A stretch of 64,000 nucleotides of DNA from Scyliorhinus canicula (lineage: Eukaryota), in assembly GCF_902713615.1 (NCBI RefSeq), contig NC_052154.1, positions 159,380,754-159,444,753 of the forward strand, in the 5' to 3' direction. Shown here piece by piece: positions 2,681 to 62,111 of this stretch (position 1 is its first letter; each line of letters starts with the position of its first letter). The notes under the pieces are model-generated. The model was not told the DNA's origin. It saw only the letters and a list, made by a program, of their open reading frames with translations, and did not search any database. The position numbers and the translations under genes were made by a program.

Positions 2681-3679
2681 GACATCAATTTAAAGCTATT
2701 CTTATGTTGTGCAGCTCAACTGGCTAATGGAACACTAGGATCCCAAATTTTGGCAAAGAGTAGACAGGCAGCGCCTGCATTGTTTAGTTATGACAAAGGA
2801 AGCATTAAGCTACTAGTTGCGTTATTTAGTCAGGTATACTGATTTACGCAAGTATGAGGCTGGCAACATTGGTAGGTGTGTTGGGGGGGGGGGGGGGTGG
2901 TGGGGGGAGTGGATTATCTAACTGGATATTTGGTGTGAGTTTAAGTTACAGGAGTTGCTGCTAAGTGAGGGATGGTGCATTGCTTGGCACAAGACGTTGG
3001 TGATGCGGCCAGTGGATGTCATGTGAAAATGCATTCACTGATGTTGATTGTCTGTGTTGTGAGGTCATTGAGCCTTATAGTGCTGCTACCAGGTCCATGG
3101 GTACAAATTCCACTCTTGCCTCCAGCACCACATCCATCACTATGAACTCTTGGCATGTACTTAGCAACAATGTATTTTGCAGCAGTCCTTTCATGCCGAT
3201 TCTCTTCAAGGTAGTTTCTCTTTAAGAGCAAGCTAGCTGTGTCATGTTGTGCTCAATGCTGCTAGGGCCTGCTGCTGCGCACAGAGCTGGCCAGCAGTGC
3301 TCAAGAGCAGAGAGCAGAGTTGAAGGTGCTCCAGCTCGTGCTGTGAGTCGGGATTTTTTTATGATGCCCACCTCCATCAGAATGGGTACAGACAGGTCAT
3401 GACTCAGCGTCACCCATGCCCAAAACCCAGCTCATCCAGCTTCTAGCTCAATGTCTTCCAACCTCACCTAAAGCAATAACACAAGATCATCTGGTAGTTT
3501 GAAGTATTAGGAGCAATTTATACATTTTTAAGCAAATACAAAATAGATGTCCCTTTAAGGATGTAGAAATAAACAAAGATTTGCAGCACAGTAGGAAGCT
3601 ATTTGATGGATTGTACCCATGCCGGCCAAATTATACAACTTCGTGATTTGACAAATTTGTACTGCAAATGTCGCATAAT

Positions 3680-7996: not shown

Positions 7997-8295
7997 TCAA
8001 CTTAATTTCAGTCTGAAGTATCTGCAAATTGGATCCATCTCAGTGATAACATCAACTTGGAACTGACAATTGTGATCTTCTTGCTTTGGTGTATAAGTTA
8101 ATGCTGTGGTGAAACCCACACCAGTTTTAAACGGTGTGTTTGCAATGCAGCTCATATCTTCAAAAGGGTAAACGTCTCTGTACCAAGTGATGTGGGCATC
8201 ATCCACGGTGGTTCCTTTAACAGTGCAGGAAATTGTCACGGGCTGCCCGGCTCGAGGACATTTTGTTTGGCAAGTTATCTGTGACACCTCTTCAT
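7997..8295 (-). CDS. Exon 12, terminal post-TM Ig C1-like domain 7 ending in TGA
   Basis: Acceptor ttttattccaacag|; VTISCTVKG...ITWY...[10 protein letters not shown]...QFQVDV...LKLS-stop; F-strand Cys replaced; no TM. Confidence 0.85.
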
Positions 8296-17200: not shown

Positions 17201-20200
17201 GGTTCATTACCCAAAACCAAATCCAATGTGGCCTCGCCTCTTGTTGGCCTGTCAACATATTGTGTCAGAAAACCCTCCTGCACACATTGTACAAAGAACG
17301 ACCCATCTAATGTACTCAAACTATATATTTTCCAGTCAATATTTGGAAAGTTAAAGTCTCCCATAACAACTACCCTGTTACTTTCGCTCTTTTCCAGAAT
17401 CATCTTCGCCATCCTTTCCTCTACATCCCTAGAACTATTAGGTGGCCTATAGAAAACTCCCAACAGGGTGACCTCTCCTTTCCTGTTTCTAACCTCAGCC
17501 CATACTACCTCAGAAGAAGAGTCCCCATCTAGCATCCTTTCCGCCACCATAATACTGTCCTTGACTAGCAGCGCCACACCTCCCCCTCTTTTGCCCCCTT
17601 CTCTGAGCTTACTAAAACACCTAAACCCCGGAACCTGCAACAACCATTCCTGTCCCTGCTCTATCCATGTCTCTGAAATGGCCACAACGTCGAAGTCCCA
17701 GGTACCAACCCATGCTGCCAGTTCCCCTACCTTATTTCGTATACTCCTGGCATTGAAGTAGACACACTTCAAACCACCTACCTGAACACTGGCACCCTCC
17801 TGCGAAGTCAAATCTGTGCTCCTGACCTCTATACTCTCAATCTCCCGTACCCCAAAACTACAATCCAGGTTCCCATGCCCCTGCTGAATTAGTTTAAACC
17901 CCCCCAAAGAGCACTAACAAATCTCCCCCCCCCAGGATATTGGTGCCCCTCAGGTTCAGATGTAGACCATCCTGAAGCTGCTGCATGGGCTGCTGAGGGT
18001 AATGAAGGAGGTGAGTAGCCATTTCTATTTTCCGGCATGCATCTAAAGACCCTGGAGCTGTACCTGTGCCAGTGGGGGGGAGGGGGGGGGCTTTTCATCT
18101 GTTAGGCCTTTAAATATTGTGAAGACCCATAACAGGGGAAACACCAGGTGCTGCCTATCTGTCAAACTAAACATCTTTAAACTCCGTGTCAATAAGGCGG
18201 TAATGTCGGAAAATGGGATGCTGCTGTGATCACTTCATTCCTTCTTTATTTTAGGAGGATCAGAGTGGTATCTCTACCAAACATGAAAGCAGACCTAAAA
18301 AAAATGTCCAGGACATTCTGTATAATAACCTGAAATGTCATACTGATGCCACTATGGATTACAACATGCACAAAACAAGAACTTCTCAAAATGAGCACTT
18401 TACCTTCATCAGGTGCTTTGTTTTCATTAGTTCCATCTTTATCGTTACCATCTGAACAGAGAAACAACTTAATTAAATACATTGGAAGCGTTTATTTAAT
18501 TTGACCAAAGTTAGTGTATTAAGTAACTCAGCCAATTGTATTGAAACAAACTGAAGTCACCAAAAATAAACTATTTCTAGCAGTAAAATAAAGTTCCAAT
18601 GCCGGATCATGTGATGCGGGTGAGGGAATAGCAGCTTTTCCGCGGGCTCTAGTGCCACTCGCTTTATAATGTCATTTATCTTGATTGCCCGGCACAAATT
18701 TGCCTAATCTGTGAATTAATAGTTGATGTTATGACCCTCATAGACCTCTGGATTAGTATTGGTGAGAATATGCCGACAAACATGACAAAATCCGGCAGTA
18801 AAAGAGAGCATTCAGATTTAACGGGACTTTGCAGAACTGGCCTCGGCTAATTCATTTGTGGCCAGTGACTTCAAGTGTCATCTTAACGCATGATAAAAAT
18901 CTCCCTGTCACCTCCCATTCCACCCTCTACCCGAGCACTAGCTTTGGATGTGTGGAGGACATCCATGGGATAGTGATTTTCCTTTTACTCAGCTCATTAG
19001 TTTCACACTAGAGTTGACCATCTTTTAGTGCCTTGGGCGATCCTATATTCGGTCTCTTGTTCTATAGGCAGTATTGTCATCACCAACCATGCTCCCATTT
19101 TCCTGGAATTTTGCGATTGGAGATCTGTTTCACGGGGGAAAAGGGCCACAAACAAGCAATTTGTGAAGGAAGTTAACGCAGCACGGTTGGCTGTCTCCTT
19201 AATGACACATCAGGCTGAGAGAAGCTTAACATTTGCAACTCAGAAACTGTAAGAGTCTGGGAATAAACCGAGAAAATACTTGGCCTACTTGACTAAGAAG
19301 TAGGCAGACTCCAGGGCTATCCTCTCTGTATGTTGTTGGGGGGGGGGGGGGAGGGGGTGAAGTTAATGAAAATGAAGGTGATCAAAGCGATTTTGGGGGA
19401 TTTCAATGCTGAATTATATAAATCTGATCAGTCTGGTGATGTGATGGCAGATATGGTATGTTTTGTCTCTTCCCTTGCTCTCCTTGCGGCTTCGGAGGAT
19501 CAGCGCTTGGCCCTTAATGCTCTCATTTTTAAAGACGAGATGGCTGCAGCTATTAAGGAACTTTAACCAGGCAAAGCCCCGGGGCCAGATGGTTTTGGGT
19601 GTGAGTTTACAGGGAGTTTAAGGATCTTTTGATGAAACCATTGGTGGCTCTGTAATTGTCTGTATTGTCTCTGTAATTTTGAAGATAGGTAAAGACCCGG
19701 AGGAATGTGCCTCTTACAGGCCAATCTCTCTGTTGAATGTTGATTTGAAATTGTTATCTAATGCACTGGTGAGAAAGTTGGAGAGTATCCGTCCGACAAT
19801 TATTCAGGAGGACCAGAGTGGGTTTATTAAGGGCAGGTTCTCCAGTAACCATGTAATGAGATTGCCGGACATGATTCAGGCTTTCCAGAAGTGGGCTCTG
19901 GATGCACTGGTGATCTCCTTGGATGGGAAGAAAGTCTTTAATCGGGTTGAGTAATTACATACAATGCGTATGGGCCTATGTTAAGATTCAATCCTATTGA
20001 TCTGGTGTAGTCAGAGAGTTGAAGAAAATCTTTGACAAAACCTTGGAGTTTAACCTTTTGTTCCTAGTTTTGGGTCTTTCAGATGGGAGAATTACTGATG
20101 TTAACTACTGACGTGACTGAATAAAGGCTGTACAATATATCGTGACTTTTGCAGCTTGTAAGATTATCCGATGCTCCTGGAGTAGTGACAAATATCGTTC

Positions 20201-23200
20201 AATTGAAAATGGGGATAAATTAGTTATGGATTGTATTTCTATGGAACCTCTGACATCTGTGATCTGTTCAATATCTCATGCATTCCATAGAGTATTGGGG
20301 GATTTGTTTTTTGTCACATGTACCGAGGTACAGTGAAAAGTATTTTTCTGCGAGCAACTCAACAGATCATTAAGTACATGGGAAGAAAAGGGAATAAAAG
20401 AAAATACATAATAGAGCAACACAAGGTATACAATGTAACTACATAAGCACCGGCATCGGATGAAGCATACAGGGTGCAGTGTTAATAAGGTCAGTCCATA
20501 AGAGGGTCATTTAGGAGTCTGGTGACACTGGGGAAGAAGCTGTTTTTGAGTCTGTTCGTGCGTGTTCTCAGACTTCTGTATCTCCTGCCCGATGGAAGAA
20601 GTTGAAAGAGTGAGTAAGTCGGGTGGGAGAGATCTTTGATTATGCTGCCCACTTTCCCCAGGCAGCGGGAGGTGTAGAGGAGTCAATGGATGGGAGGCAG
20701 GTTCATGTGATGGACTGGGCAGTGTTCACGACTCTCTGAAGTTTCTTGCGGTCCTGGGTCGAGCAGTTGCCATACCAGGCTGTGATGCAGCCCGATAGGA
20801 TGCTTTCTATGGTGCATCTGTAAAAGTTGGTAAGGGTTAATATGGACATGCTGAAATTCCTTAGTTTCCTGAGGAAATATAGGTGCTTTTGTGCTTTCTT
20901 GGTGGTAACGTCGACGTGGGTGGACCAGGACAGATTTTTGGAGATGTGCATCCCTAAGAATTTGAAACTGCTAACCATCTCCACCTTGGCCCCGTTGATG
21001 CTGACAGGTGTGTGTACAGTACTTTGCTTCTTGAAGTCAATGACCAGCGCTTTAGTTTTGCTGGCATTGTGGGAGAGATTGTTGTCATTACACCACTCCA
21101 CTAGGTTCTCTATCTCCTTCCTGTATTCTGACTCGTCGTTATTCGAGATCCGGCCCATTATGGTTGTATCATCAGCAAACGTGTAGATGGAGTTGGAACC
21201 AAATTTTGCCATGCAGTCGTGTGTTTACAGGGAGTAGAGTAGGGGGCTAAGTACGCAGCCTTGCGGGGCCCCGGTATTGAGGACTATTGTGGAGGAGGTG
21301 TTGTTGTTCATTCTTACTGATTGTGGCCTGTTGGTCAGAAAATCGAGGATCCAGTTGCAGAGTGGGGAGCCAAGTCCCAGGTTTTTGGAGCTTTGATATG
21401 AGCTTGGCTGGGATTATGGTGTTGAAGGCGGAGCTGTAGTCAATAAATAGGAGTCGGATGTAGGAGTCCTTGTTTTCGAGATGCTCCAGGGATGAGTGTA
21501 GGGCCAGGGAAATGGCGTCTGATGTGGACCGGTTGCAACGGTATGCGAATTGCAGTGGATCAAGGCGTTCTGGGAGTATGGAGGTGATGCGCTTCATGAT
21601 CAATCTCTCAAAGCACTTCATTACGATTGAAGTCAGGGCCACCGTACGGTAGTCATTGAGGCACATTGCCTGGTTCTTCTTTGGCACCGGTATGATGGTG
21701 GTCTTCTTGAAACAGGTGGGGACCTCAGAGTGGAGTAGGGACAGGTTAAAGATGTCCGTGAACACCTCTGGCAGCTGGTCCGCGCAGGCTCTGAGTGCAC
21801 GACCAGGGGTCCCGTCCGGTTCCGTCGCCTTCTGAGGGTTCACTTTCAGGAAGGCCGATCTGACTGGAAGCGGTGATGGTGGGTATGGATGAATTATGAG
21901 CTGCTGGGGCACTCGACAGCAGATTGTTGGTTACCTTCTCGAACCAAGTATAGAATGCATTGAGTTCATCGGGGAGGGGTGCGCTGCTGCCAGAGATACC
22001 GCTCGGGCTTTGCTTTGTAGCCCGTTATGCTGTTTAGTCCTTGCCACAACTGCCGCGAGTCTGTCTGTGACTCTAGCTTGGTTTGATATTCTCTCTTGGC
22101 ATCTCGGATGGATTTGCGGAGGTCGTACCTGGATTTCTTGTCTAGGTCAGGGTCGTCTGCCTCGAACGCCTCAGACCTGTCCTTCAGTAGGGAGTCAATC
22201 TCGCAATTGAGCCATGGTTTCCGGTTGGGGAATGTACGTACTGCTTTCTTTGGCACGCAGTCGTCCACACAGGGACCCCATAGACTCCACCCTGTCCGAC
22301 TTGCTCCTGTTGGACTTTCCATGAGCCATATTGTAAGTCTTGATCTCGCAATACATGAAGATGTGCAGTTTGAATGGTTGTTATTCTTTGTACTTTTATG
22401 GCCCTAATACTTCTTCCCCCCTTAATCTGTTATTAACCTGCTATTGGATTGATCCGGTATCAAAACTGGAGGCACTAGTTCCTTAAGTATGCTGTTTTAA
22501 ATTTAGCCTATCTTGTTTGTTTCTATATTTGCAATAATTTTAGTTCTGTACTGTACCTGTTTTGCATTGTTAATTACTTTCTTTCTAATCAATGGTGATA
22601 TTTGTGAAAAATCCAATAAAAATATTTTCAGTATCAAATAATCAAATGAAAATGCTTAGAGTTCAACAAAACCATCAATATTACAACTATAACAAATGAA
22701 ATGAAATGCTTTATTCTGAATCTGACTCCAATAAAACAACACACCTTGAAGGAGCAATTTGAGATTTTTCTCTTGAATTTTCTTGGTTGCTGCATGAAGC
22801 ACCTCGCATCTGAATAAACTCCCATGATCATCCTCAGCTGCAATAAATTCTATGCTCGCAATTGATGAAAAGAGACTATCATCAGCAATCACAGGTGAAG
22901 GACGGTTAATTACCCCTAGAAAAGGTTTCTCATTTTTAAACCACTTTACTTGGACGGGAGCAGGAGCATAGCTTGTCAATGAGACACTCAATATTATAGG
23001 CTGGGAAACATCAGGGAACGCTGGACCAACTTTAATAGCAGACAAGGTAGGAGAAAGAGCTGAAAAACAAATAAAAGGTTTATGATTAATCTTTAACTTA
23101 CAAATAAGGGGCTTTTCAAAGTAACTTCATTGAAGCCTACTTGTGACAATAAGCAATTTTCATTTCAAAAAGAACAAGTGTTTTTCCAATTTGGATTACT

Positions 23201-24633: not shown

Positions 24634-24665
<32 letters not shown>

Positions 24666-25803
24666 ACCACCACACACCCACACAATCTCTAGTATCTAGT
24701 TGGATTCTGTTAGATTATTTGTGTGCGACTTCGTAAATGCATTCACTTGATCATAAACATTTAAGTGTGAAGAGGAACTTTTCAAATTGGAGGAGAAAAG
24801 GATCAGGATAAAACCTACCTGGACATGTTAAAAATGTAGTTTTTGTAATTGGCACTTTTAATTGAATGTGATTCACGTGGAAGGAAAATTCTTCATCAAA
24901 ATTTTCTGCAGTTGTTTTTATTTGCAAATGGGAAGTCAACCGAAAACATCCATTTTCCTCCCTCACGGGTCCTTTAACTGTCATGCCACTGACTACCTGC
25001 TTTCCATTCTTTCGCCAAAATGTTTCAATAGCTTGTGGGTAAAAGTTAGAGACGTTGCAGATCAAAGTAAGATCTGTACCATACATTGAGTCTGGTGGGT
25101 CAAATTTGATATCTTCAACAGATGGAATTCCTGTAAAGATTGCACAAAACCAGAGTTGATTACTGTATAAAATAGCCATTATGTTGGAGTATCAAAAGGA
25201 AATTCAAAACATGTCTTTTCCCCCCAAATGTTGATGTTTATACAAGGACAGTCACCATTTTTCCCCCAAATGTGGATGTTTATACAAGGACAGTCACCAA
25301 ATTTACCATTCTGCAACTTAGGCCTTTTTCAAAGATTATGACAACATCAAGAAAACCTTCTTACTTCACAGAAGATTTCTGCTGCTGATTTGATAATCAC
25401 AGCTATGTTGGAATAGCGCAATTTAGGGCCAATGCTGCCAACAAAAGGAGGTCATATGCACAGAAGGAATGTAAGCAATATAGCACTATTTCTCAGGGCA
25501 CTCCAAATGTTGTCATAACCAAAAAAGCAATGAAATGAAAAGCGCTTATTGTCACAAGTAGGCTTCAAATGAAGTTACTGTGAAAAGCCCCTGGTCGCCA
25601 CATTCCGGCACCTGTTCAGGGAGGCTGGTACGGGAATTGAACCGAGCTCCTGGCCTGCCTTGGTCTGCTTTAAAAGCCAGCGATTTAGCCCAGTGTGCTA
25701 AACCAGCCCCTAATGCCAGCATTGTGTTGGAGGCAGCTGTACTCAGCACCGGTCATCCTGAGAATCAGGGGAGAACAAGTAAGGTTAAAAGTAAGGTTAA
25801 GGT

Positions 25804-25835
<32 letters not shown>

Positions 25836-28800
25836 TGTTGGGTTACGGGTATAGGGTGGATACGTGGGTTTGAGTAGGGTGATCATTGCTCGGCACAACA
25901 TCGAGGGCCGAAGGGCCTGTTCTGTGCTGTACTGTTCTATGTTCTATGTCTAACACATCCCAGGGGATGCACCCAGTCTGAAGTCTGTGAGGCTGGGGGG
26001 GAAAGGGCTATTAAGAGACCACTTCAGGACCTTAATAGGGACAGGTGCTGGCTTCCGTCTGCCTACAGTAAAATTGCATGCTAGTTTATGCTCCCCCTCA
26101 TTCCTCAGAATCTGCGGGGGGGGGGGGTAAATTCTGGCCTGTAGATTTGACGGTCTTACAGCTCATGTATAGCTCAGCTTTATTTATTGCAAGTGTTTTG
26201 CACTGCAAAACTGATTGTGAAGGAATGTAGTTATATTAGTGTAACATTTATCAAACCAAGTTTGATCATCAACAATTATTGCTATGCCATCGGTTTAGTC
26301 CAGTGTTGCAAATATATGACTTTTTGATTTTTGGAATGAAAGTCTGAACTGTAGAAAATGGTATAAATCCACCTAAAGCATGCTTGGGAGTTTATTATAC
26401 TAAAGATTTGAGGTTAATAGCTTGAAAGGTAAGATCATAAAACAGGAGGTGCGCTTACTTAGTTAAAGAACTGGAAAAAAGGGTCTAGAGGTCATGGATA
26501 CAGTGTGCGCCATACTTTTCAGGGGACGGAGCATCACGAAAGTGGCACCGCCTCCGATTTTGGCGTCATCGGGGATTCTCCGCCCCGTCGCCGAACACAA
26601 GTTCGGCATCGGGGAACGGAGAATCCAGCCCCTGATGTCTGCAATCCTTGCAGTTAGGAGTAGTTGCAAGAAATGTTTTTGTTTTGGGAATTCAAGCTGA
26701 ATTAGTTTTAAAGCATTGCGTGAACCCCGAAAGGCTGTATAACCCGCTTTGACAAAGGGTTATCTGTACTCGAAACGTTAGTTCTTTTATCTCCCTGCAG
26801 ATGTTGCCAGACCTTCTGAGATTTTCCAGCATTTCCTCTTTGGTTTCAGATTCCAGCATCCGCAGTAATTTGCTTTTATTAAGCTGTATAACCCATTTAC
26901 TTAATCAGATCAAAGAATAAACTGTAAATAAGAGATAGTCAACTAAAGATTGGTTTGGGAAAACCCAGAGCATGCTACATTGTTATCGAGATGGGTGGAA
27001 CTTAGAAGGTTCTCTGATTTACCTGGCTGTTTTCCGCGAGTTAGCGGAGGTTTGGAGCTCACCGAGAGGAAATAGCCAAAATGAAGACAGTAAAATAGTC
27101 CTGCGCTGTAAGCAGCATAAAAAGAAAATTTTCATAATTCATCATGTGAAAGGCAGATGCGGATAAATCTCAGTTTGAATTTTGAGAGGGACAGAAACTG
27201 GAAGATTGTTGATTTTGAAACTAGTGGGAGAATCTACAGTGGTCTCTATAGTCTTTCAGCAAATAAAGCATTCAAGCAGATTAGCTTCGAAGTACAGACT
27301 GGACCATCCACAGTCCAGAGATAAAATAAAAAGTTTCTCTCTGAGAATTGTTGGAGCTGAGGGGAATTCTCCAGCGGACTGTGGCACACTAATGGGTGTC
27401 CCGACAGAAGCAAATAACTATTAAGATTATTGTGTCTTACAGTAGAATTCTTGGGGGAAATAAGTAGTAAACCACAGTGCATAGAATGTGTTGATAATTA
27501 CATGTTCTTTGTTTAATTTGTTCTAGGTACAATAAAAAATTTGTTTTTTAAAATAGATTTAGAGAACCCAATTATTTGTTTCTAATTAAGGGGCAATTTA
27601 GTCTGGCTAATCCACCTACCTTACACATCTTTGGGTTGAGTGTGCGAGACCCACGCAGACACGGGGAGAATGTGCAAACTCCACACGGACAGTGTCCCGG
27701 GGCCCGGATCGAAGCCGGTCGTCGGCACGTGAGGCAGCAGTGCTAACCACTGCACATTGTGCCCCCCTCAATAAAAAAAACTTAAAGTGAAATTTTGTGA
27801 TGGAGTTCTATTGGTTAAAATGTGCTCAGATTTCTCTATCAATGTCCCCAATGTGATTGTAACGCCTGTTATATTAACCTGCCTGACTAACAACCTCTAT
27901 TAAAACATGTCAATTTAAAATATATCTGTCCATTTCCAAATAATCTATTCAACATTCTTGAAGAGGTACTATGAAGTTCTTATTAGAATTTGACTTACCC
28001 ATTATTTTCAGAAAATGACTGGACGAGACAGGTTTGTTTGAAGTTTCAGAGTGAAGGATTTGCATTTTGAACTCTTTTCCATGGTCCAAATAAGTTGGAA
28101 TGAACGTCCTTTTCGACCATCGAGAGTACAAACCAGCACTATTCAACTGAATATCATCAGTTTCAACTCCATCATTAGTTTTCTCAAACCCTTTGAACCA
28201 GAATATTTGACTGTCTTTTGGAAAGAAGTCGAATGCTTTGCAGGAAAGTGTTACAGGTTTTCCCACTTCCGGGTGAGCTGGATCTGCTATAACTTCTGTT
28301 ACCTTTGGTGCTGACACTGCATGGATACAAAATTATCAGCGTTAATGGGATTGCATAACTGAATGAATGCCGCAATTTTTTTTAAAAGCACCTTGATAAA
28401 TTGTCAAACATTGATTTTATGATCAAATATTATTTTCCTGTAGCTCTGGAAATTCTCGTCCAAGATTAATGGACCTTTACATGGTCCATGTCCTGCCCGC
28501 GGCAATCTTGCGGCGGGCATGGCCAAAGAATCCAGCTCAATGAATTAAACATACAATAGAAAGTTGGGTTGCTCTGAACCCGCCACAAATATTAGGGTAT
28601 ATCTGAATTAAGACATGACACCTGTAATGGAGCTATCTTTAGTTTAACGTGGATGAGTCAAAAGCTCAATAATGTATTGATTACTGCCAATTTATACTTC
28701 CAACACACATTAACAGAACAATTATTTTGTCTCTTTTTGTGTTCTTCCTCTGTGACATTAAATTTATATTTCCATCTCATTCATGGCACAGTTAATTTCA

Positions 28801-40800: not shown

Positions 40801-43800
40801 CTGATACTGGATAATGGTATAAATTCTAGTTGGCTCTGTACTACATTTTTGCTCCATTATTACTTTTGAATAGTTCTGCTGAAACAAAAGGTACTCATTG
40901 GCTTAGATGCGTGTAGAAGAGGCAATTTATAAGAATAGATAGTGTAGACACAATGGCCGCGATTCTCCGCAAATGCGGTGAGTCGTAAAGACTGCCGTGA
41001 AACTGGCCGTGTTTCACGGCAGCCTCCGCGCCCCCTCCCGGGACCCGATTCTCTCCCCCGGGCGGGGCTAGCAGCGGGGCCCCGTGAAGCACGGCATCGC
41101 GGGCTTAGCGACCGTCGCTAAGTCCGCGCGCCAAGCGTCACGCCGGCTGACGCGTACGATGACGTCAGCCGCGCATGCACGGATTGGATGGCTCCAACCC
41201 GTGCATGCGCGGGGCCGTCATCTCCCTCGGCCGCCCCGCGGACTGATCCTGCGGGGCGGCGGAGGGAGAAAGAGTGCGTCCGTTACGGACGCACTGCCCG
41301 CGATCGGTGGGCACCGATCGCGGGCCCATGCCCCCCTTGGCACGGCCGTGGTACTGCCGTGCCAATCGGGGCCCTGGATGCCCAGAACGGGCATGTTGCG
41401 GCCGTTTTTACGACGGCAGCAAGCAGGTGTGTTTGCGGCCGTAAAGGCCTGGGAACTCGGCCCATCGGCCTGGGGAGAATCGCTATTCGCCATAAAAAAC
41501 GCGAGCAGCGATTCGTGTCGTGGGGCGGCCGTGTTGGGGGGGGGGGGGAGAATAGCGGGAGGGCGTGAAAAATGTCGGGGACGCCCTCCCGCTATTCTCC
41601 GACCCGTCGTGGGCAGCGGAGAATCGCGCCCAATGCTTGTTAATATTAGAAAGGACACAAAATGGTTGTTAGCTAAGATAGCAATACTAAAAACACAAAT
41701 TGGCTGAACTAGCCAGATTCCTGAACAATAAGTTAAAAACTGTGTAAACGACCTCATGAGAATCAGGCATGGTTATGTGTAGGGAGTATTTCAACAACCA
41801 CTGATAATAGCTTCACAGAACAAGGAGCACAATGTATCCTTAATAGCTCAAGGTCCCCAGCTGCAGACAGGACATATCCTTATGTTAGTCTTGAGTGACT
41901 TTTGCATGAGGTTAGGAGCTGGTGAGGCAACACTCACTTTAACCATATATGCTTTTAACTGGGATGCTAAGAAAATTGATTGACTGCATGTAATGAATTG
42001 TGACGCGAATATAGTTGATTGATTGTATGTAAATGAGAATACAACTAATTCCGCCCCTTGAACCTGTATATTAACCCAATGCGAACCTCAGCTCAAGTGA
42101 GAAAGAGTATTGCAAGGTTGCAGAGCATCCAAATCTTTCTCCCAGATCTGATATAATAAACTGCTTCTTTACTCACTCAAAAAGTGAGAGGCCAAGGCTG
42201 CAGGGAGGCCAGAGATGCAGGAGTGGGAACACAGGTCAGGGAGTCTGTGATGGAGACTCAGCCAAGACAGTGTGCGCCACTCAGAGCCTTGGACTGCAGT
42301 TAGTCAGAACACTGCTCCGGATTGGGGATGTGATGAAGATTAGACAGAATGGGAATAGAGGCAGGGACTGGGAAAGGAGAGAGTGAGAGAGAGAAAACCA
42401 GAATGGGAAAGGAGGGGGATAGAGACAGTGTGCAAAAGGAAAGCAAGAAGTTGAGTTAAGTTTCTGTGGGTGAGACACAAAAGTGGTGTTGCTCAGGGTT
42501 TATTTGGGTGATCTAGTGTTATCTAATTTGAATTTATACTCAGCTGTTTTATTTTATTTTTGAAGTTATTCCAGCTAGGATTGCACAATGCTGCACACGT
42601 GTGGTACAGATTTTACAATATTTCCTCCGAACATTTCTTGCCCAGAAAAATCAAACTCCAGCTTTGACATCGTAAGAATCATGAATCGAGGTGGTTTCAC
42701 TTAAAGCCACAATTTTCAGGAATACAACCATAACTTTAAGAAATGTTTTAATGTGCATTTATTGTTCTCTTAATTTTCAGTATTCTCAAATTGATTCAGT
42801 CGCTATACCTGGGTACAAGCAGACTATTTTAAGATAACCCAATTTAAATACTGTTGACAGCAGTTTAATAAAAATCTTAAAACTACCTCTAAAAGCAGAG
42901 CACAAACATGCGGTACTATTAAACAGCTTTAAAACACATTTATCATTGTCTCCCATTTTGAAATTTTTAAATGTTGGACGCAATTCTCCCAAAGAAGTTG
43001 TAAGTGTGGTTGGTCCCCAGCGGGAAATGCAGTGTGATTCCCACCTGGTGAGTTGGTTCCACCGGCATTGAAAGGGACAGGGCCAAAACAAGCCGGCAAG
43101 CCTGGCTTCACAGAGATGGGGGCGGACCCCAAACACATCCCGACCACCCAGGAGCTACAATGGCCTCAGAGCCCACCGGAGTAAGTTCCACTCTGGGCTG
43201 GGAGCATCGGGAACTGATAGGCAGCCAGCTTGAATCCCGTTTCAGGCCTCTCCCGGAATTTTCCTGACATAGTGGGACTTGCACTGACACATGGCGGCCA
43301 GAGAATCACCCCCATTATGTCAATTAAGTTAATTTGAAAAATTATTGGATACAATAGTCATTTAATAGTGGAACAATAAAGGATCAATTCTTCATTTAAA
43401 TCGGGTGCAAATCAAACTGGAAACTCAATGGTAAAAAATGTTTGTAAGCTTTAACAAAAACACTGAAAAATATTTTTCAAAGAAGGGAACTTGCCTGTCA
43501 CTATGAGTTTACTTTCCTGAGAAAGGCCATCAGGAAGAACTGACCGATGTGTCACAACACATCTGTACACATCTCCATCATCATCCAATGTTGGTTTAAT
43601 TGTTACTCTGCTGGAAATACTAAAGGTTCTATCTGTATTGGTAATGAAGGCACCAGTGCAGATATCATGTTTTAATTCCTGAGGTTCCTTAGGTCCCTTG
43701 TTTGGAATTTTTTGCCAGCTGAGTTGAAGGTCCTGAGGATAAAATTCTGTAACGTTACAACTCACAGACCCCTCAGATCCAATCAAAATGTCGATTTCAC

Positions 43801-46800
43801 TTGGGGACAAACGGACCGTTGGTCGAGCTGCAAGAAAGATAAATGTAACAATAGGTCAGAGAGGCAAAAGACATTACCAAATAAAGATCTAAAAGGCAGG
43901 TCTAAATTAATCCACACAAACATGTACCAAAAACAACACTTTCCTTCCTTCAGCAATTTCATTCATTTAATCATTTACTAATTTTATAAGATGGTGCACA
44001 ATAGGGGCAGCACAATGGTTTAGTAATTAGCACTGCTGCATCACAGCACCATGGGACCCGGGTTCAATTCCGGCCTTGGGTCACTGTCTGTCTGGAGTTT
44101 GCACGTTCTCCCAGTGTCTGCGTGGGTTTCCTCCGGATACTCCGGTTTCCTCCCACAATCCAAAGATGTGCGGGTTAGGTGGATTGGCCATGCTAAATTG
44201 CCCCTTAGTGCAGGTTAGGTTATGGGGTTACGAGAATAGGTGGGAGTGGGCTTGGATAGAGTGCTCTTTCAAAGGGTTGGTGTAGGCTTGATGGGCCGAA
44301 TGACCTTCTTCTGCACAATCAGGATTCTATTATGTTCTTCTATGAATTATATCTAGAGTAAATTAAGAAAACTACTGTAATACCTCAAATTCAGACGGAA
44401 ACAATTCAGATTCCTAGAACAAGGATAGGGGGAATGGAAGAAGAGATACGTATAAAGCAGAGGAGGAAGGAGGAAGAGGAGGGAGAGGAGGACAACCTCT
44501 TTACCGAACCCCCAAAGGCTGAAAAGGAAGTGGAAAAGAAACATACATTTATCTGTACATCACATTTATCTGTAGATCATCTTTAACAACCAAAGCACAT
44601 CCCCAAAGCTTTTTACAACCAATGAAGTACGTTTGAAGTGTAACTGTTGTAAAGATAGGAATCACAGGACAGCCAATTTGCACACTGCAAACTCCCACAA
44701 ACAATGTGATAATAACCAGAAGATCTGTTTTTGTGATGTTGACTGAAGTATAAATATTGGCCAGGACACCAAAAGTAGCTTTCCTAATCTACTATCCAGT
44801 CTTTTACATCCACCCGAGAGATAGACAGGGCCTTGGACAGATAGACAGGGCCTTTGTTTAATGACTCATTGAGGGACCACACTCTAACATGCAGAATTCC
44901 TTGGTGATGCACAGCACAGTATCAGCTTTTAATTGTTTGATTCAAGTTCTGGAGCAGGACTTGACACCACAAGCTTCTGACAGAAAGACAGAAGTGCTAC
45001 CAAATAAGTCAGAGCTAACAAAGAAGTTGCTTTGGATGAAAACACCAAAATAAAGGACTTGGGTTACTGAAAGAATGGTGAAACAGGGAAGCCACAGTCA
45101 GAAGAATGGTGTATTCTGGATCACATCCTTCTCGGGTAGAAAGTTCCAAAAATCCTCAATCTTTTTAATGAAGAAATCTCTCCTCATCTGAGTCCTAAAT
45201 GATTGCCCCAGTTTCCTGAGACTGTGTCTCCCCCCCCCATGCTCAAGATTCCACATGCCCCTCACACCCTGTCAAACCCCTTCATGAAATCTTGAATGCT
45301 TCAATATGATCACCTCTTTGAGTTCTTGTATTTCCAGAGGATACAGACCTAATTTTTTTCAGCATCTCATCATAGGCAACCCTCTCATGACAGGGAACAA
45401 TCTAGTGAATCCCTGCTCTTCCACCTCCAACGCAATTATATCCTTCCTCAAGTACGGAGACCAAAACTGTTCACAGTATTCCACAGTACAACTCTGAGAA
45501 GACTTCTTAACTCTTCTACTTTAATCCCCATGCAATAAAAGGCCAACGTGCCATTTGCTTTCCTAATGGTTTACAGTTTTGTATTACTTGTACAAGTACA
45601 CTCTCTGAACATCAACATTTACAAGTTTCATGCCTTCTAAAAAGCATGCATTCCAACTTAGCTCTATAAAATCCAGCAAACATTAGTCACAACTTCTTTG
45701 TCTAAGCCATTAAGATTTTAAATAGCTATGGCCCCAACACTGATCCTTGCTGTTTCGAAGTTGAAGTTTTCTACATTCTGGACAAACAGAAGTAGACAAC
45801 ATTGTTGCAGAAATCAGCCTATGGACACAGATTTTTCAGGGCTATGGAAACAATACACAGAATGAGTAAGTGATGGCAAAGAAAGCCCTCAGATTTGTAC
45901 CAGTGTATCTACCATATTAATATCAATTCTTTGTGCTACGTTTAAAAAAAAAATTATGTATACACACACACACTCTCTCTCCTAGGATAAGGAGCAGAAT
46001 GATTCTAACAGTACAAGATGCATTAATATCCAGGTCTCAAAGGTGAAAAGGCTGTGTAACAACCCAAGGACCCATTGATTCCAATTGAAATCTGCTTATT
46101 TTACAGCTCTAGCTTAACATTTCCCCAACACAACAACTGGTAGCATTTTACTGAGTCTTACCTGACACTTGCAAAATTGAACTCTTTTCTACCTTTTCAG
46201 GTGTGACAAATACAATACAAGTGTATTTCCCTTCTTCGTCCAACTGTATATTCGTAAGGTGAAGTGAAGCATCTCCTTCCTGTAATTTATTTTGAGACAT
46301 TTTTGCTCCTTGCCTTTTTGGAGTAAATATTCCTCCATTAAAGATAAAGATCTCTTGATTTTGGGGCCCAGTCCACTGAACACCTACGTTTGAAAGGTCG
46401 AGGGTTTGTGAGCCCGTAATTTTACATTCCAGGAAAACATCATCCTCCACCAAGACTTTCTTTGGGCTTGCAAATATTGTCACGTCCAAAGTTTCTAAAT
46501 AGACAGAACATTAAACGTTATAGTTATTCAATTGTCAAAACTAGAAATAAAAGAAATTCAAAATATACACTTTAAAGTGGCACAGTAGCACTTCAGATAC
46601 TCCTCTCCAAAGCACTGCCATGGAACGACTACTTGCAAGTTGTATAGAAACATAGAAAATAGGAGCAGGAGGCAGCCATTCTGCCCTGTGGGCCTGCTCC
46701 ACCATTCATTATGATCATGACTGAACATCCAACTCAGTAACCTGTTCCCACTTTCCCCCCATATCCTTCAATTCCTTTAGCCCCAAGAGTTATATCTAAC

Positions 46801-61800: not shown

Positions 61801-62111
61801 CGGGGCCCCCCCTGCAACAGGCAGGCCAGGCAACAAACACCGAGTTGTCAATCGGTTGTGAAAGAGCCAGCGCCGGAGTATTTCTCTGTTATTGTCCGGG
61901 CGCCATTTTGTCAGGAGGGGTTTCTTCACGCGATGTTTTTTTTAAAAGCTCCCCCCCCCCCACCCCACCCCACCCCACACTTATTGCGCAGGACCCGTGC
62001 ACCGCGGGACGTTCGTTTACCTGTCGGAGTGACGAGCCACACTGCCAGCAGAGCCCCACACAGGAATGTCCACCCACCACGGTTCATCGCCACTCCAGTC
62101 GCCGCAGCCAT
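7997..62111 (-). CDS. NCR3LG1: B7-H6/NCR3LG1-like gene, 12 coding exons: SP-IgV-IgC1-TM-(IgC1)x6-linker-IgC1; predicted 1093 aa
   Basis: Twelve exons, all phase 1, with AG acceptors and GT donors (one GC), sum to 3282 nt in one frame. Leader, V and first C1 resemble B7-H6 as I recall it: [18 protein letters not shown]; [26 protein letters not shown]; [12 protein letters not shown]...[11 protein letters not shown]...YRCVVTHRS. The symbol means 'like'; orthology is not tested. Confidence 0.8.
8602..8950 (-). mobile_element. V-SINE
   Basis: Reverse complement of the 5776-6133 family. Confidence 0.9.
8951..13790 (-). mobile_element. Rex1/Babar-like LINE remnant split by a CR1 insertion (arms 8951-9884 and ~13596-13790)
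   Basis: RT motifs [16 protein letters not shown] and KELVIDFRK. The two arms join into sequence colinear with the second copy at 21270-21480. Confidence 0.75.
9885..13595 (-). mobile_element. CR1 LINE (HER1-like): 5'-truncated ORF1 esterase (13092-13577), ORF2 APE-RT with one frameshift near 12440, SINE fragment in the 3'UTR (~9970-10165)
   Basis: VHIGTND and DGLHLN (SGNH); [38 protein letters not shown]. Confidence 0.95.
14915..17975 (-). mobile_element. CR1 LINE, complete ORF2 broken only by an in-frame TGA at 16918-16920; ORF1 stub
   Basis: ORFs 16918-17907 (APE) and 15004-16890 (RT) are in the same frame; (CTATGTT)n 3' tail. Confidence 0.95.
18404..18451 (-). CDS. Exon 11, 48-nt charged linker microexon [16 protein letters not shown]
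   Basis: Strong acceptor ttgtttctctgttcag| and donor GAAG|gtaaag; exactly 16 codons, phase 1-1, no stop; lies in unique sequence between repeats. Confidence 0.65.
18620..22625 (+). mobile_element. Heavily decayed L1-clade LINE interrupted by a Rex1-like element
   Basis: [32 protein letters not shown] and [13 protein letters not shown] at 19570-19955; AATAAA-type 3' end near 22615. The 5' boundary is approximate. Confidence 0.65.
20320..22272 (-). mobile_element. Rex1/Babar-like LINE, 5' truncated, frameshifted RT
   Basis: ORFs 21966-22322, 21247-21912 ([36 protein letters not shown]) and 20703-21212 (FADDTT). Confidence 0.9.
22745..23059 (-). CDS. Exon 10, post-TM Ig C1 domain 6 (105 codons)
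   Basis: Acceptor tatttgtttttcag|, donor CAAG|gtgtgt; [11 protein letters not shown]...KWFKN...FRCEVLH (B-strand Cys replaced by Val). Confidence 0.9.
24819..25130 (-). CDS. Exon 9, post-TM Ig C1 domain 5 (104 codons)
   Basis: Acceptor aatctttacag|, donor CCAG|gtaggt; [10 protein letters not shown]...FWRKNG...EFSFHVNH (F-strand Cys replaced by Phe). Confidence 0.92.
25216..25299. repeat. Local ~42-bp tandem duplication
   Basis: TTTTCCCCC(C)AAATGT(T/G)GATGTTTATACAAGGACAGTCACCA occurs twice. Confidence 0.85.
27999..28316 (-). CDS. Exon 8, post-TM Ig C1 domain 4 (106 codons)
   Basis: Acceptor tatccatgcag|, donor ATGG|gtaagt; [10 protein letters not shown]...FWF...EFKMQILH (F-strand Cys replaced by Met). 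Confidence 0.92.
31851..32204 (-). mobile_element. V-SINE (adjacent inverted copy at 31416-31730, plus strand)
   Basis: Same family as 5776-6133. Confidence 0.9.
33115..33426 (-). CDS. Exon 7, post-TM Ig C1 domain 3 (104 codons)
   Basis: Acceptor tgtttcttattcag|, donor CTGG|gtaagc; [10 protein letters not shown]...VTW...DGLY...FRCQVEH. Confidence 0.93.
33652..34032 (-). CDS. Exon 6, post-TM Ig C1 domain 2 (127 codons)
   Basis: Acceptor ttcttgttcccaaag|, donor ACAG|gtatgt; [10 protein letters not shown]...RW...YICEVQH. Confidence 0.92.
34260..34685 (-). CDS. Exon 5, post-TM divergent Ig C1 domain 1 (142 codons)
   Basis: Acceptor ttttgttttattag|, donor GGAG|gtaaat; open 426 nt; [13 protein letters not shown] and FHVHH motifs; both canonical Cys and the Trp are replaced. 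Confidence 0.85.
35620..35890 (+). mobile_element. Second SINE family with AAGCCTACTTGTGACAATAAAGATTATT-type tail (copies at 23820-24100 -, 25540-25700 -, 39085-39270 +, 52485-52780 +, 60945-61245 +, 62655-62920 -)
   Basis: Recurring GGACATTCTGAATTCTCCCT body and TTTTCACAGTAACTTCATT...AAGCCTACTTGT tail. Confidence 0.8.
36042..36393 (+). mobile_element. V-SINE, full length (further copies at 29570-29865 -, 37205-37548 -, 44004-44330 +, 62946-63255 +, 27560-27770 -, 30970-31175 +)
   Basis: Shared head, V-core and tail; boundaries approximate. Confidence 0.88.
36780..37060 (-). mobile_element. Penelope-like element fragment (C-terminal GIY-YIG endonuclease region)
   Basis: Translation [29 protein letters not shown] resembles the vertebrate PLE C-terminus. 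Confidence 0.6.
37955..38068 (-). CDS. Exon 4, transmembrane helix [38 protein letters not shown]
   Basis: Acceptor tttcaactttcag|, donor GGAG|gtaatg, 114 nt, phase 1-1; about 25 hydrophobic residues followed by KIK (positive-inside). Confidence 0.9.
38380..39760 (-). mobile_element. Old CR1 RT 3' fragment with a short SINE inserted at ~39085-39270
   Basis: [11 protein letters not shown] and [15 protein letters not shown] in broken frames. Confidence 0.85.
40955..41630. mobile_element. GC-rich non-autonomous element with terminal inverted repeats, flanked by a CAAT duplication
   Basis: Left end GGCCGCGATTCTCCGC; right end GCGGAGAATCGCGCC; CAAT at 40951-40954 and 41631-41634. Confidence 0.7.
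43495..43827 (-). CDS. Exon 3, extracellular Ig C1 domain (111 codons)
   Basis: Acceptor ctttcttgcag|; motifs C-x4-FYP-x5-W and Y-x-C-x-V-x-H; NVT sequon; donor is the GC-type ACAG|gcaagt. Confidence 0.93.
46162..46494 (-). CDS. Exon 2, Ig V-set domain (111 codons)
   Basis: Acceptor tctgtctatttag|, donor TCAG|gtaaga. Contains B-strand Cys (FLEC), C-strand Trp (VQW) and D-x-G-x-Y-x-C (DEEGKYTC). Confidence 0.95.
47675..51295 (+). mobile_element. CR1 LINE: 5'UTR-like head, internally deleted ORF1 (47826-48170), ORF2 48170-51210 with one frameshift near 49800
   Basis: HIGTND, DGLHL; [28 protein letters not shown]; 3' tail CCTACTCCTGCTCCTAGTTCTTATG. Confidence 0.95.
51296..53700. mobile_element. 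Cluster of older CR1 fragments in both orientations with a SINE at 52485-52780
   Basis: [15 protein letters not shown] (51201-51530) and further broken RT motifs. Confidence 0.7.
55476..55764 (-). repeat. 3' LTR
   Basis: 289 bp; 8 mismatches to the 5' LTR by manual alignment (about 97% identity). Confidence 0.95.
55840..58609 (-). pseudogene. Gypsy Pol split by frameshifts: protease and RT (57452-58609), RNase H (57040-57519), integrase (56420-57076, 55840-56607)
   Basis: LFDSGS; [19 protein letters not shown]; [13 protein letters not shown]; HxxxxH...Cxx[18 protein letters not shown]. Confidence 0.9.
58522..59769 (-). CDS. Gypsy Gag with two CCHC knuckles (3' part of the ORF probably out of frame)
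   Basis: [14 protein letters not shown] and [14 protein letters not shown]. Confidence 0.85.
   Translation of the reverse strand: MESAVKPGRLELDPQDAEAKEIFSHWLRCFKAYLAEASTAETTEEQKLSLLHARVSHRISPQLNLAGSYTAALAVLNKIYVRPINEVYARHVFMTRRQRPTESLAEFLRELNHSSNDCNYQAVTAAEHRKLAVRDVFVVGLRSNYVRQRLLEKGPQDLETTVEAATMMEVSFRSLNSFPADPATQSWAPDQRLPQACATWPPSHHAAPASHYAAPDCHFCGQNQHPRQHCPARNTTCSSCRRKGHYARVCLAKRAPASSSPAAKVIARLTRRPAGPEALRPMPRLRPLQPRAIHGGRHLGKPPPRGRSRATHGACHLGRHLPRRPPRAIHGPDLHLRARTTHRKNTTMNSEGSHHGATPAQLIEPPTTRNSVQSLWTNHARSICEMRWQRFKSTGTKRHASSTPGALRASDIQTW
59803..60091 (-). repeat. 5' LTR
   Basis: 289 bp; TATA-like TATAAGTA on the minus strand at 59932-59939; ATTAAA hexamer. Confidence 0.95.
61680..61770 (-). 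ncRNA. Penelope-like terminal-repeat fragment containing a minimal type I hammerhead ribozyme motif
   Basis: Minus strand AAAAAC-CTGAGGA-A-GGAGC-AGT-GCTCC-GAA-AGCT-A-GTGTTT. Confidence 0.6.
62021..62111 (-). CDS. Exon 1, signal peptide [30 protein letters not shown]
   Basis: ATG at 62111-62109 in a CpG-rich region; basic residue followed by a hydrophobic core; donor ACAG|gtaaac in phase 1, which joins the V exon as GAA (E). Confidence 0.85.

What the first reader, a model, noticed from the sequence alone, without database searches (positions are those of the whole stretch)
7997..62111. B7-H6-like immune receptor with seven Ig C1 domains on the cytoplasmic side
Seen in sequence: after leader, V, C1 and TM exons, eight more phase-1 exons splice in frame (seven C1-type domains and one linker) to a stop. 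There is no second TM, internal leader or stop, so about 800 of 1093 aa lie C-terminal to the membrane anchor. KIK after the helix supports type I topology. Established: B7-family proteins, including mammalian B7-H6 (the NKp30 ligand), have Ig domains only outside the cell and tails without Ig domains; C1-set domains are typical of secretory-pathway immune proteins such as Ig, TCR, MHC and tapasin. Inference: this is an inside-out extension, an intracellular C1 array acting as a signalling scaffold, pathogen-protein decoy/sensor or cytoskeletal tether coupled to an NK-ligand ectodomain. I cannot confirm novelty; non-mammalian B7-H6 literature and reports of fish proteins with intracellular Ig domains need checking.
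Basis: partly seen in the sequence, partly recalled or inferred. Interest (0 to 1): 0.95.

Follow-up and report, generated by a model that had tools for sequence, protein, structure and literature searches.

The report
Catshark B7H6 with post-membrane Ig tail
This is the small-spotted catshark's copy of the NK-cell ligand B7H6 (NCR3LG1), a real, expressed gene in which seven immunoglobulin-like domains follow the membrane anchor; sharks, bony fishes, amphibians and reptiles share this layout, so it is ancestral rather than unique, but what the tail does and which side of the membrane it sits on have never been tested.

Summary
Twelve minus-strand exons (62111-7997) splice into a 1093-aa ORF identical to RefSeq LOC119971843 of Scyliorhinus canicula. 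Spliced transcript contigs from five studies join C1 to TM to the next three Ig exons. The ectodomain is B7-H6-like: the best solved relative is human NCR3LG1 (E 5e-32). The nurse-shark orthologue (1092 aa) is deposited as "B7H6". Proteins with the same build are named NCR3LG1 in reptiles and amphibians.

The layout is leader, V, C1, one TM, a divergent Ig domain, five C1-set domains, an acidic linker and a last Ig domain. It is collinear, domain by domain, from chimaera to alligator, so it is the ancestral form of B7H6, not an oddity of this gene.

A cytosolic position for the tail is predicted, not shown. In favour:
- there is one signal peptide, one TM and a Lys-rich flank;
- four of the seven tail domains lack the canonical disulfide (in three of them no sampled species has it);
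- glycosylation sequons are not enriched in the tail.

Against: TM-exon-skipping isoforms, predicted in three species, would secrete the whole chain.

Function is unknown. I could not read the 2012 B7H6 paper to see whether the tail was already described.

The parts
62021..62111 (-). Exon 1, coding part: ATG at 62111; signal peptide (aa 1-30). The 5'UTR lies upstream and was not mapped.
   Evidence: Translation identical to P0063; hydrophobic h-region; AF2 helix 15-26.
46162..46494 (-). Exon 2: B7-type V domain (aa 31-141).
   Evidence: Pfam V-set and I-set; best PDB match is human B7-H6; Cys54/Trp71/Cys123 invariant in 21 species.
43495..43827 (-). Exon 3: ectodomain C1-set domain (aa 142-252); GC donor.
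   Evidence: Pfam C1-set 44.7 bits; junction to the TM exon seen in 4 runs, skipped stretch CT..GC on +.
37955..38068 (-). Exon 4: stalk, single transmembrane helix and KIK flank (aa 253-290); 114 nt, phase 1-1, so skipping it keeps the frame.
   Evidence: Hydropathy 2.79 over 262-280; AF2 helix 268-288; spliced to exon 3 and to exon 5.
34260..34685 (-). Exon 5 (E5): divergent Ig-like domain with a long insert and no canonical disulfide or Trp (aa 291-432); the family's signature domain.
   Evidence: No Pfam hit; phmmer finds 54 representatives, many carrying it at about aa 280-440; AF2 pLDDT 85.5, Ig fold nearest beta2-microglobulin and MHC-II C1.
33652..34032 (-). Exon 6 (E6): C1-set domain with an insert (aa 433-559); both Cys kept.
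   Evidence: Pfam C1-set 34.3 bits; junctions in RNA contigs.
33115..33426 (-). Exon 7 (E7): C1-set domain (aa 560-663); both Cys kept.
   Evidence: Pfam C1-set 65.8 bits; junction in RNA contigs.
27999..28316 (-). Exon 8 (E8): C1-set domain (aa 664-769); the F-strand Cys is replaced (Met here, never Cys in 21 species).
   Evidence: Pfam 36.9 bits.
24819..25130 (-). Exon 9 (E9): C1-set domain (aa 770-873); the F-strand Cys is replaced by Phe.
   Evidence: Pfam 51.4 bits.
22745..23059 (-). Exon 10 (E10): C1-set domain (aa 874-978); the B-strand Cys is replaced (never Cys in 21 species).
   Evidence: Pfam 32.5 bits.
18404..18451 (-). Exon 11: 16-residue acidic linker [16 protein letters not shown] (aa 979-994).
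   Evidence: Located by peptide search; needed to reproduce P0063; pLDDT <50.
7997..8295 (-). Exon 12, coding part (E12): last Ig-like domain and stop (aa 995-1093); C-terminus ...YFRLKLS.
   Evidence: Pfam sub-threshold; AF2 pLDDT 84-92; held in full by RNA-type runs.

Best explanation
The locus is the catshark orthologue of B7H6/NCR3LG1 (RefSeq LOC119971843), the B7-family ligand of the NK receptor NKp30 in mammals.

Shown:
- A 12-exon, 54-kb gene whose main assembled mRNA encodes signal peptide, V, C1, one TM helix, E5 (a divergent Ig domain), five C1-set domains, an acidic linker and a last Ig domain.
- The same domain order, domain by domain, from chimaera to alligator.
- Tail domains that are about as conserved as the ectodomain, several of them more so among cartilaginous fishes.

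Inferred: a cleaved signal peptide plus a single stop-transfer helix followed by Lys/Arg makes the protein type I. V-C1 is then displayed outside the cell and the 803-residue tail lies in the cytosol. The tail would be a beads-on-a-string rod of Ig domains that fold without needing disulfides.

Speculative: the rod is a scaffold. It could tie display of the NK ligand to cytosolic partners or to the cell cortex, or space and cluster the ligand. Skipping the frame-neutral 114-nt TM exon could release the whole nine-domain chain as a soluble form.
For: - Gene model equals P0063 exactly.
- Spliced contigs carry C1->TM->E5->E6->E7 in runs from five studies.
- The ectodomain's best solved relative is human B7-H6, E 5e-32, against 4.5e-14 for the next family.
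- The nurse-shark orthologue is named B7H6, and reptile and amphibian orthologues are named NCR3LG1.
- There is a single strong TM at about aa 230-350 in nearly all TM-bearing family models scanned, and no convincing second TM; models truncated at the N-terminus put it nearer their start.
- Residues after the TM are Lys/Arg-rich in the sequences listed.
- Every catshark domain's best match in chimaera, coelacanth, bichir, frog and alligator is the domain at the same position. The one exception is E6, which the alligator model lacks.
- Identity of tail domains is equal to or above that of the ectodomain C1.
- The canonical Cys pair is invariant in V, C1 and E7 and near-invariant in E6. No species has it in E5, E8 or E10, only 4 of 21 have the second Cys in E9, and it is variably kept in E12.
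- Sequons observed/expected: ectodomain 50/37, tail 104/106. In cyprinid relatives with post-TM Ig domains the figures are 58/16 and 13/9.8.
- AF2 of the full length gives nine confident Ig sandwiches, one helix at 268-288, and pTM 0.40.
Against: - No experiment on topology exists for any member, as far as I could find.
- C1-set domains are otherwise known only from the secretory pathway (established knowledge).
- E6 and E7 keep both cysteines in 19-21 of 21 species, as a disulfide-bonded luminal domain would.
- Isoforms that skip the TM exon are predicted by RefSeq in Heterodontus (a paralogue), Bombina and Varanus, so the array may also, or mainly, act outside the cell.
- The sequon contrast within the B7H6 family proper is weak.
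- The RNA evidence is assembled contigs. These cannot quantify isoforms, and a minor TM-less form in catshark would have been missed.
Confidence: 0.6

Rival explanations
1. The Ig array does its work outside the cell. Skipping the frame-neutral TM exon yields a secreted chain of nine Ig domains (a soluble B7H6 with a long C1 stalk). In the membrane form the tail has no function of its own.
For: RefSeq isoforms that lack exactly the TM exon exist in Heterodontus (P0103), Bombina NCR3LG1 X2 (P0038) and Varanus NCR3LG1 X2 (P0136). Exon 4 is 114 nt and phase 1-1. All other C1-set domains are secretory-pathway domains. The Cys pairs of E6 and E7 are conserved.
Against: In catshark the TM exon is present in the contigs of all five runs laid, and RefSeq lists one model only. 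The TM is kept in the main model of about 60 family members. If only the soluble form mattered, a dominant TM-containing mRNA would waste 800 residues. Three tail domains have no canonical disulfide in any sampled species and a fourth lacks it in 17 of 21. Sequons are not enriched in the tail.
Confidence: 0.2
2. The hydrophobic exon does not leave the tail as a stable cytosolic array. Either the protein is cleaved near the membrane and the tail is released or degraded, or the segment is not a conventional stop-transfer anchor.
For: Only the lack of any direct data on topology or processing, plus a low-confidence juxtamembrane stretch, 254-270.
Against: The hydropathy score is 2.79 over 19 residues, with a basic flank conserved across the family. 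The tail has been under purifying selection since before cartilaginous and bony vertebrates split, which argues for a folded, functional product.
Confidence: 0.08
3. Artefact: two neighbouring IgSF genes whose phase-1 exons merely can be joined in frame, or a chimeric gene model or contig.
For: All IgSF exons are phase 1, so in-frame joining alone proves nothing. A paralogue (LOC119971842) lies next door in the genome.
Against: The junctions on both sides of the TM exon are read directly in spliced contigs from several studies. The paralogue is not in this window. The same collinear protein is modelled or cloned in more than 40 species, including a nurse-shark sequence deposited under the curated name B7H6 rather than as an automatic model.
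Confidence: 0.02

Closest known systems
Nurse shark B7H6 (Ginglymostoma cirratum, 1092 aa, deposited as 'Natural killer cell cytotoxicity receptor 3 ligand (B7H6)'; P0068)
   Same: Orthologue with identical domain order and almost the same length. Identity per domain is 42-73%, lower (30%) in the short TM exon.
   Different: A different species; the catshark protein is labelled only 'uncharacterized'. The paper that goes with the deposit is presumably Flajnik et al. 2012, Immunogenetics 64:571. It is not in the library, so I could not see whether the post-TM Ig domains were discussed there.
Mammalian B7-H6 / NCR3LG1 (NKp30 ligand; PDB 3PV6, 4ZSO, 6YJP)
   Same: A V-C1 ectodomain, clearly the closest solved relative (E 5e-32); single-pass type I layout.
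   Different: The human protein has a short cytoplasmic tail without Ig domains (established knowledge). The catshark protein and all non-mammalian orthologues found carry 6-8 Ig-like domains after the TM. NKp30 binding by the shark protein is untested.
Reptile and amphibian 'natural cytotoxicity triggering receptor 3 ligand 1' RefSeq models (Alligator, Gavialis, turtles, geckos, Varanus, Ambystoma, Bombina and others)
   Same: The same V-C1-TM-E5-C1-array build with positional orthology, and for crocodilians, turtles and most amphibians the same ...L-K-L-x C-terminus (geckos, Varanus and Podarcis end differently).
   Different: One domain fewer (Alligator lacks E6) or more (coelacanth, lungfish and bichir have an extra domain before E12). 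These are automatic annotations with no functional study.
UrIg / UrIg2 (non-rearranging elasmobranch antigen-receptor-like genes with many C1 domains; PMC12227049)
   Same: One V domain followed by a long run of C1-set domains in elasmobranchs. The UrIg2 chain 9DMX is among the tail's PDB matches.
   Different: UrIg2 has a VJ-type V domain, all its C1 domains lie outside the cell with canonical disulfides, and its TM is at the C-terminus. Here the V domain is B7-type and the TM sits between the first C1 and the rest.
Cytosolic Ig or FN3 modules of other proteins (titin, obscurin and filamin I-set domains; the FN3 repeats in the integrin beta4 tail)
   Same: Beta-sandwich modules that fold without disulfides in the cytosol and act as rods or scaffolds (established knowledge). 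This is a functional analogy for the tail.
   Different: Those are I-set or FN3 domains, not C1-set, and only integrin beta4 combines them with a type I membrane anchor. No homology is implied.

Membership tests
B7-H6 / NCR3LG1 | V + C1 ectodomain closer to B7-H6 than to other B7 or IgSF families | tested here: met
   phmmer against PDB: human NCR3LG1 chains E 5e-32 to 1e-31 (113-114 bits); next is CD276 at 4.5e-14.
B7-H6 / NCR3LG1 | Orthology with genes named B7H6/NCR3LG1 in other species | tested here: met
   Collinear with nurse shark 'B7H6' and with NCBI 'NCR3LG1' of Alligator, Bombina, turtles, geckos and axolotl. The names are the annotators'; I did not check synteny.
B7-H6 / NCR3LG1 | Binds NKp30 (NCR3) | not testable with these tools
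   Needs a binding assay with shark NKp30.
B7-H6 / NCR3LG1 | Short cytoplasmic tail without Ig domains (mammalian form) | tested here: not met
   803 residues with seven Ig-like domains follow the TM. This is the family's non-mammalian form.
C1-set Ig domain (Pfam PF07654) | Profile match above the gathering score | tested here: met
   The ectodomain C1 and E6-E10 score 32-66 bits against a cut-off of 21. E12 scores 16.8 (below). E5 has no match.
C1-set Ig domain (Pfam PF07654) | Canonical B-F disulfide cysteines and C-strand Trp | tested here: not met
   For E5, E8, E9 and E10 one or both Cys are missing (absent in all 21 species for E5, E8 and E10). Trp is kept in E6-E12 and absent in E5. 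V, C1, E6 and E7 keep the pair.
C1-set Ig domain (Pfam PF07654) | Ig beta-sandwich fold | tested here: met
   The AF2 model of E5 (pLDDT 85.5) matches beta2-microglobulin and MHC-II C1. The full-length model folds all nine domains at pLDDT of about 80-93. These are predictions.
Type I single-pass membrane protein with a cytosolic C-terminus | N-terminal signal peptide, one stop-transfer helix, positive-inside flank | tested here: met
   Hydropathy scan and AF2 helix 268-288; KIK after the helix; no convincing second TM in this protein or its relatives. No dedicated signal-peptide or TM predictor was available.
Type I single-pass membrane protein with a cytosolic C-terminus | Experimentally determined orientation of the C-terminal part | not testable with these tools
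   Needs tag accessibility, protease protection or glycosylation mapping.
UrIg / UrIg2 | VJ-type V domain, extracellular C1 array, TM at the C-terminus | tested here: not met
   The V domain is B7-type, the TM lies after the first C1, and no hydrophobic segment follows the last Ig domain. Compared with the description in PMC12227049.

The most novel reading that the evidence does not exclude
The major product really is a type I protein whose C1-set Ig domains work in the cytosol, and this has not been described. If so, B7H6 would carry the first known cytosolic C1-set module. It would be an ancestral jawed-vertebrate tail that couples an NK-cell ligand to intracellular partners, lost in mammals and absent from every bird and mammal hit I obtained. 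A related design may exist in a cyprinid IgSF family.
Probability: 0.3. Interest if true: 0.8.

Novelty: new member of a known kind. Interest (0 to 1): 0.55.

Why it matters
C1-set domains are treated as the hallmark extracellular or luminal building block of adaptive immunity (Ig, TCR, MHC, beta2-microglobulin, tapasin). Here five to seven of them sit downstream of the only membrane anchor of an NK-cell ligand. This arrangement has been held in place, domain by domain, from chimaeras to crocodilians.

Two outcomes are possible, and both are cheap to test:
- If the tail is cytosolic, it is a new working environment for this domain type and an unexplored intracellular arm of the NKp30-B7H6 axis. 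It would also reframe the mammalian tail as a replacement.
- If the tail acts through a TM-skipped secreted form, B7H6 outside mammals is also a large soluble multi-Ig protein.

For this scan, the point is that the catshark gene is an ordinary orthologue. The oddity belongs to the whole family and is already visible in public protein models.

Tried and rejected
- **Two adjacent genes, or a false TM exon.** Rejected by the spliced contigs on both sides of exon 4 and by conservation.
- **A second TM or internal leader.** The only other hit of the hydropathy scan is 440-458, at the threshold. It lies inside Ig domain E6 and is modelled as strand.
- **An Ig heavy-chain constant region (IgW/IgNAR) or UrIg-like gene.** Rejected: the V domain is B7-type, the best PDB relative is B7-H6, and the TM is in a different position.
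- **The neighbouring paralogue LOC119971842 contributing exons.** It is not in the window.
- **N-glycosylation sequons as a topology probe.** Only a weak contrast in the B7H6 family and no positionally conserved sequon on either side. The contrast is clear only in the closely related cyprinid proteins, which are not independent of each other.
- **Literature.** Eight full-text searches found no paper that discusses Ig domains in the B7H6 tail. Flajnik et al. 2012, Ohta & Flajnik 2015 and the 2023 UrIg paper are not held, so prior description cannot be excluded.
- **Not done.** Both read-laying runs went on exons 3-7, so exons 7-12 junctions and any C1->E5 (TM-skipped) junction in catshark were not examined. 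I did not run complex prediction, because I make no binding claim, and generic C1-C1 pairing would not be excluded by its controls. A Tyr-x-Asn motif in the acidic linker of several sharks is absent from catshark, so I dropped it as a family feature.


Full report
**What is there.** The window has no gaps. A stop-to-stop scan and a BLAST of the Ig-like frames against each other picked out nine Ig-like exons, plus a hydrophobic exon and a leader. With phase-1 splice sites and a 48-nt linker exon at 18451-18404, twelve exons (62111-62021, 46494-46162, 43827-43495, 38068-37955, 34685-34260, 34032-33652, 33426-33115, 28316-27999, 25130-24819, 23059-22745, 18451-18404, 8295-7997) give a 3282-nt ORF. 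All introns are GT-AG except intron 3, which is GC-AG. The translation is identical to P0063, the 1093-aa RefSeq protein 'uncharacterized protein LOC119971843 [Scyliorhinus canicula]'. Its gene spans 54,115 bp in assembly GCA_902713615.2.

**Is it one transcript?** All IgSF exons are phase 1, so in-frame joining proves nothing, and I checked RNA. Eighteen runs hold exons 5-7. Fourteen of them hold about 0.63-0.65 of the sampled words, which is roughly the exonic share of the stretch I queried. Laying the contigs of four runs from four studies on 33000-38999 showed the joints 37955->34685, 34260->34032 and 33652->33426 within single contigs in all four. Those contigs run on by up to 755 nt upstream and 1539 nt downstream. 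On 37940-43939, four runs show the joint 43495->38068, with the skipped stretch ending in the GC donor. One contig of 4956 nt is long enough for the whole mRNA. The last exon is held in full by several of the same runs and by further runs of the same studies. The TM exon is therefore internal to a mature mRNA, flanked by the ectodomain C1 exon and the first tail exon. The limits are these: contigs cannot rank isoforms, and I had no call left to look at exons 7-12 or at a direct C1->E5 joint.

**What the domains are.** Pfam calls exon 2 V/I-set. It calls exon 3 and exons 6-10 C1-set, above the gathering score. Exon 12 is below threshold and exon 5 matches nothing. With a 21-species alignment, AlphaFold2 folds exon 5 (E5) at pLDDT 85.5 into a beta-sandwich. 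Its best PDB matches are beta2-microglobulin and MHC class II C1 domains, with V domains close behind. The full-length model (pLDDT 81.9, pTM 0.40) has nine confident Ig sandwiches and one helix at 268-288. The disordered parts are the signal peptide, the juxtamembrane stretch, the E5 insert and the acidic linker. The tail as a whole matches Ig heavy-chain constant domains, beta2-microglobulin/MHC-I alpha3, SIRP and UrIg2 in the PDB. So "seven C1 domains" should read: five C1-set domains plus two divergent Ig-like ones.

**What gene it is.** The ectodomain's best solved relatives are the three human NCR3LG1/B7-H6 entries (E 5e-32). The next family, CD276, is at 4.5e-14. A phmmer search with E5 against 1.84 billion representatives gave 54 hits. 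Many are 950-1200 aa long and carry the E5-like domain at about residue 280-440. Database names and taxa show the following:
- a nurse-shark sequence of 1092 aa deposited as 'Natural killer cell cytotoxicity receptor 3 ligand (B7H6)';
- 'NCR3LG1' models of 860-1120 aa in Alligator, Gavialis, turtles, geckos, Varanus, axolotl, Bombina and other frogs;
- 'NR3L1' in Polypterus;
- uncharacterised orthologues in Callorhinchus, many sharks and rays, reedfish, sturgeon, coelacanth, lungfish, salamanders, a caecilian and Xenopus (many copies).

No bird or mammal appeared among the tail hits, within the reach of the word-indexed search.

**How old the layout is.** In a 21-species alignment, every catshark domain scores best against the domain at the same position in chimaera, coelacanth, bichir, frog and alligator. 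The one exception is E6, which the alligator model lacks. The order V-C1-TM-E5-E6-E7-E8-E9-E10-E12 was therefore fixed before cartilaginous and bony vertebrates split. Among cartilaginous fishes the tail domains are as conserved as the ectodomain or more so, for example E8 at 52-85% against C1 at 39-72%. Nearly all TM-bearing models scanned have one strong hydrophobic segment in the same region, followed by Lys/Arg and then a '(V/I)PP' start to E5, and none has a convincing second TM. Many members end in ...L-K-L-x.

**Which side of the membrane?** Nothing here is experimental. By the standard rules, a signal peptide plus one stop-transfer helix with a basic C-terminal flank puts the 803-residue tail in the cytosol. 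Three observations fit this:
- The canonical B-F cysteine pair is invariant in V, C1 and E7 and nearly so in E6. No species has it in E5, E8 or E10, and only 4 of 21 have the second Cys in E9. The remaining half-cystines are themselves 95-100% conserved. Conservation of Cys here therefore does not imply a disulfide, and at least three of the seven tail domains fold without one in every lineage. That is very unusual for C1-set domains.
- Sequons are at the random expectation in the tail (104 observed, 106 expected) and mildly enriched in the ectodomain (50 against 37).
- A cyprinid IgSF family (si:ch211-180a12.2 / 'SIRP-like') also has Ig-like domains after its TM. There the contrast is strong, 58/16 outside against 13/9.8 in the tail, but those proteins are close relatives of one another.

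On the other side, exon 4 is 114 nt and phase 1-1. RefSeq predicts isoforms that lack exactly this exon in a Heterodontus paralogue, in Bombina NCR3LG1 and in Varanus NCR3LG1. Such a form would secrete the whole nine-domain chain. For catshark only the TM-containing form is modelled, and only that form was seen.

**Most likely mechanism.** Probabilities:
- About 0.6 that the main product is a type I membrane protein displaying a B7-H6 ectodomain, with a cytosolic rod of Ig domains that do not depend on disulfides.
- About 0.2 that the array matters mainly in a secreted, TM-skipped form.
- About 0.08 for processing or unconventional insertion.
- About 0.02 for an artefact.

What the rod binds is unknown. 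Scaffold, tether and clustering are inferences by analogy with cytosolic Ig/FN3 rods (titin, filamin, the integrin beta4 tail), not findings.

**Novelty.** The catshark gene is an ordinary orthologue, a new member of a known kind. The unusual layout belongs to the whole non-mammalian B7H6 family, is visible in dozens of public models, and was deposited for nurse shark more than a decade ago. I found no accessible paper that discusses Ig domains in the tail. However, the key papers are not in the library. From memory I cannot say whether Flajnik et al. 2012 commented on it, and I put that at roughly even odds.

**Also seen.** The introns hold LINE copies (endonuclease plus reverse transcriptase) and a frame-broken LTR retroelement. 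They also hold short repeats with very high contig depth in the RNA runs. Some paralogues have tails made only of tandem E5-like repeats: seven in Heterodontus, three in Callorhinchus. Transcript contigs carry two conservative coding variants, I279L in the TM and V483I.

Noticed in passing
window 43493-43494 (minus strand), intron 3 donor: Intron 3 (C1 exon to TM exon) uses a GC-AG splice pair (G|GCAAGT). The joint is confirmed in the contigs of four runs.
   Followed up: yes
window 55843-59787 (minus strand), inside intron 1: Remains of an LTR-type retroelement: gag-like ORF, aspartyl protease, reverse transcriptase and integrase, split over several frames. GC content is high here (0.57).
   Followed up: partly
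window 10203-13012 (-), 15007-17913 (-), 47814-51207 (+): Three LINE copies with apurinic-endonuclease and reverse-transcriptase ORFs in introns 10, 11 and 1. Two lie in the same orientation as the gene.
   Followed up: partly
window about 35600-36400, 37200-37600, 38940-39340, 40140-40340: Short interspersed repeats in introns 3 and 4 whose summed contig depth in the RNA-type runs is 10^4-10^5, against about 10 for the gene's exons. Presumably these are high-copy SINE-like elements transcribed elsewhere.
   Followed up: no
P0074-P0081 (cyprinid 'si:ch211-180a12.2' / SIRP-like proteins): A teleost IgSF family also has a TM in mid-protein (about aa 293-350, depending on the model) followed by several Ig/C1-like domains with replaced cysteines. 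The ectodomain is rich in sequons (58 observed, 16 expected) and the tail is not (13 against 9.8). No E5-like domain was detected.
   Followed up: partly
P0001/P0101 (Heterodontus francisci), P0003 (Callorhinchus), P0013 (S. torazame): Paralogues in which V-C1-TM is followed only by tandem copies of the E5-like domain, separated by acidic linkers: seven in Heterodontus, three in Callorhinchus, and two complete copies plus a partial third in S. torazame. This suggests that E5 is a functional unit in its own right.
   Followed up: partly
alignment, linker between E10 and E12: Several sharks (nurse, whale, white, Heptranchias, Pristiophorus) have a Tyr-x-Asn-(Ile/Leu) motif within the acidic linker. 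It resembles a phosphotyrosine docking site. Catshark, rays and chimaera lack it.
   Followed up: no
window 37991 and 33883: Transcript contigs of some runs carry T>G at 37991 (Ile279Leu in the TM helix; runs X1 and X5) and C>T at 33883 (Val483Ile in E6; run X1). Both are conservative and are probably alleles.
   Followed up: partly
window 6482-6487 (minus strand AATAAA): The only AATAAA-type signal in 6300-7000 lies about 1.5 kb past the stop codon. That fits the roughly 1.4-kb 3'UTR implied by the 4956-nt contig.
   Followed up: no
window 1-3000: GC-rich (0.55), strongly AT-skewed low-complexity sequence with long proline- and glycine-rich open frames on both strands, downstream of the gene. 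I did not examine it.
   Followed up: no
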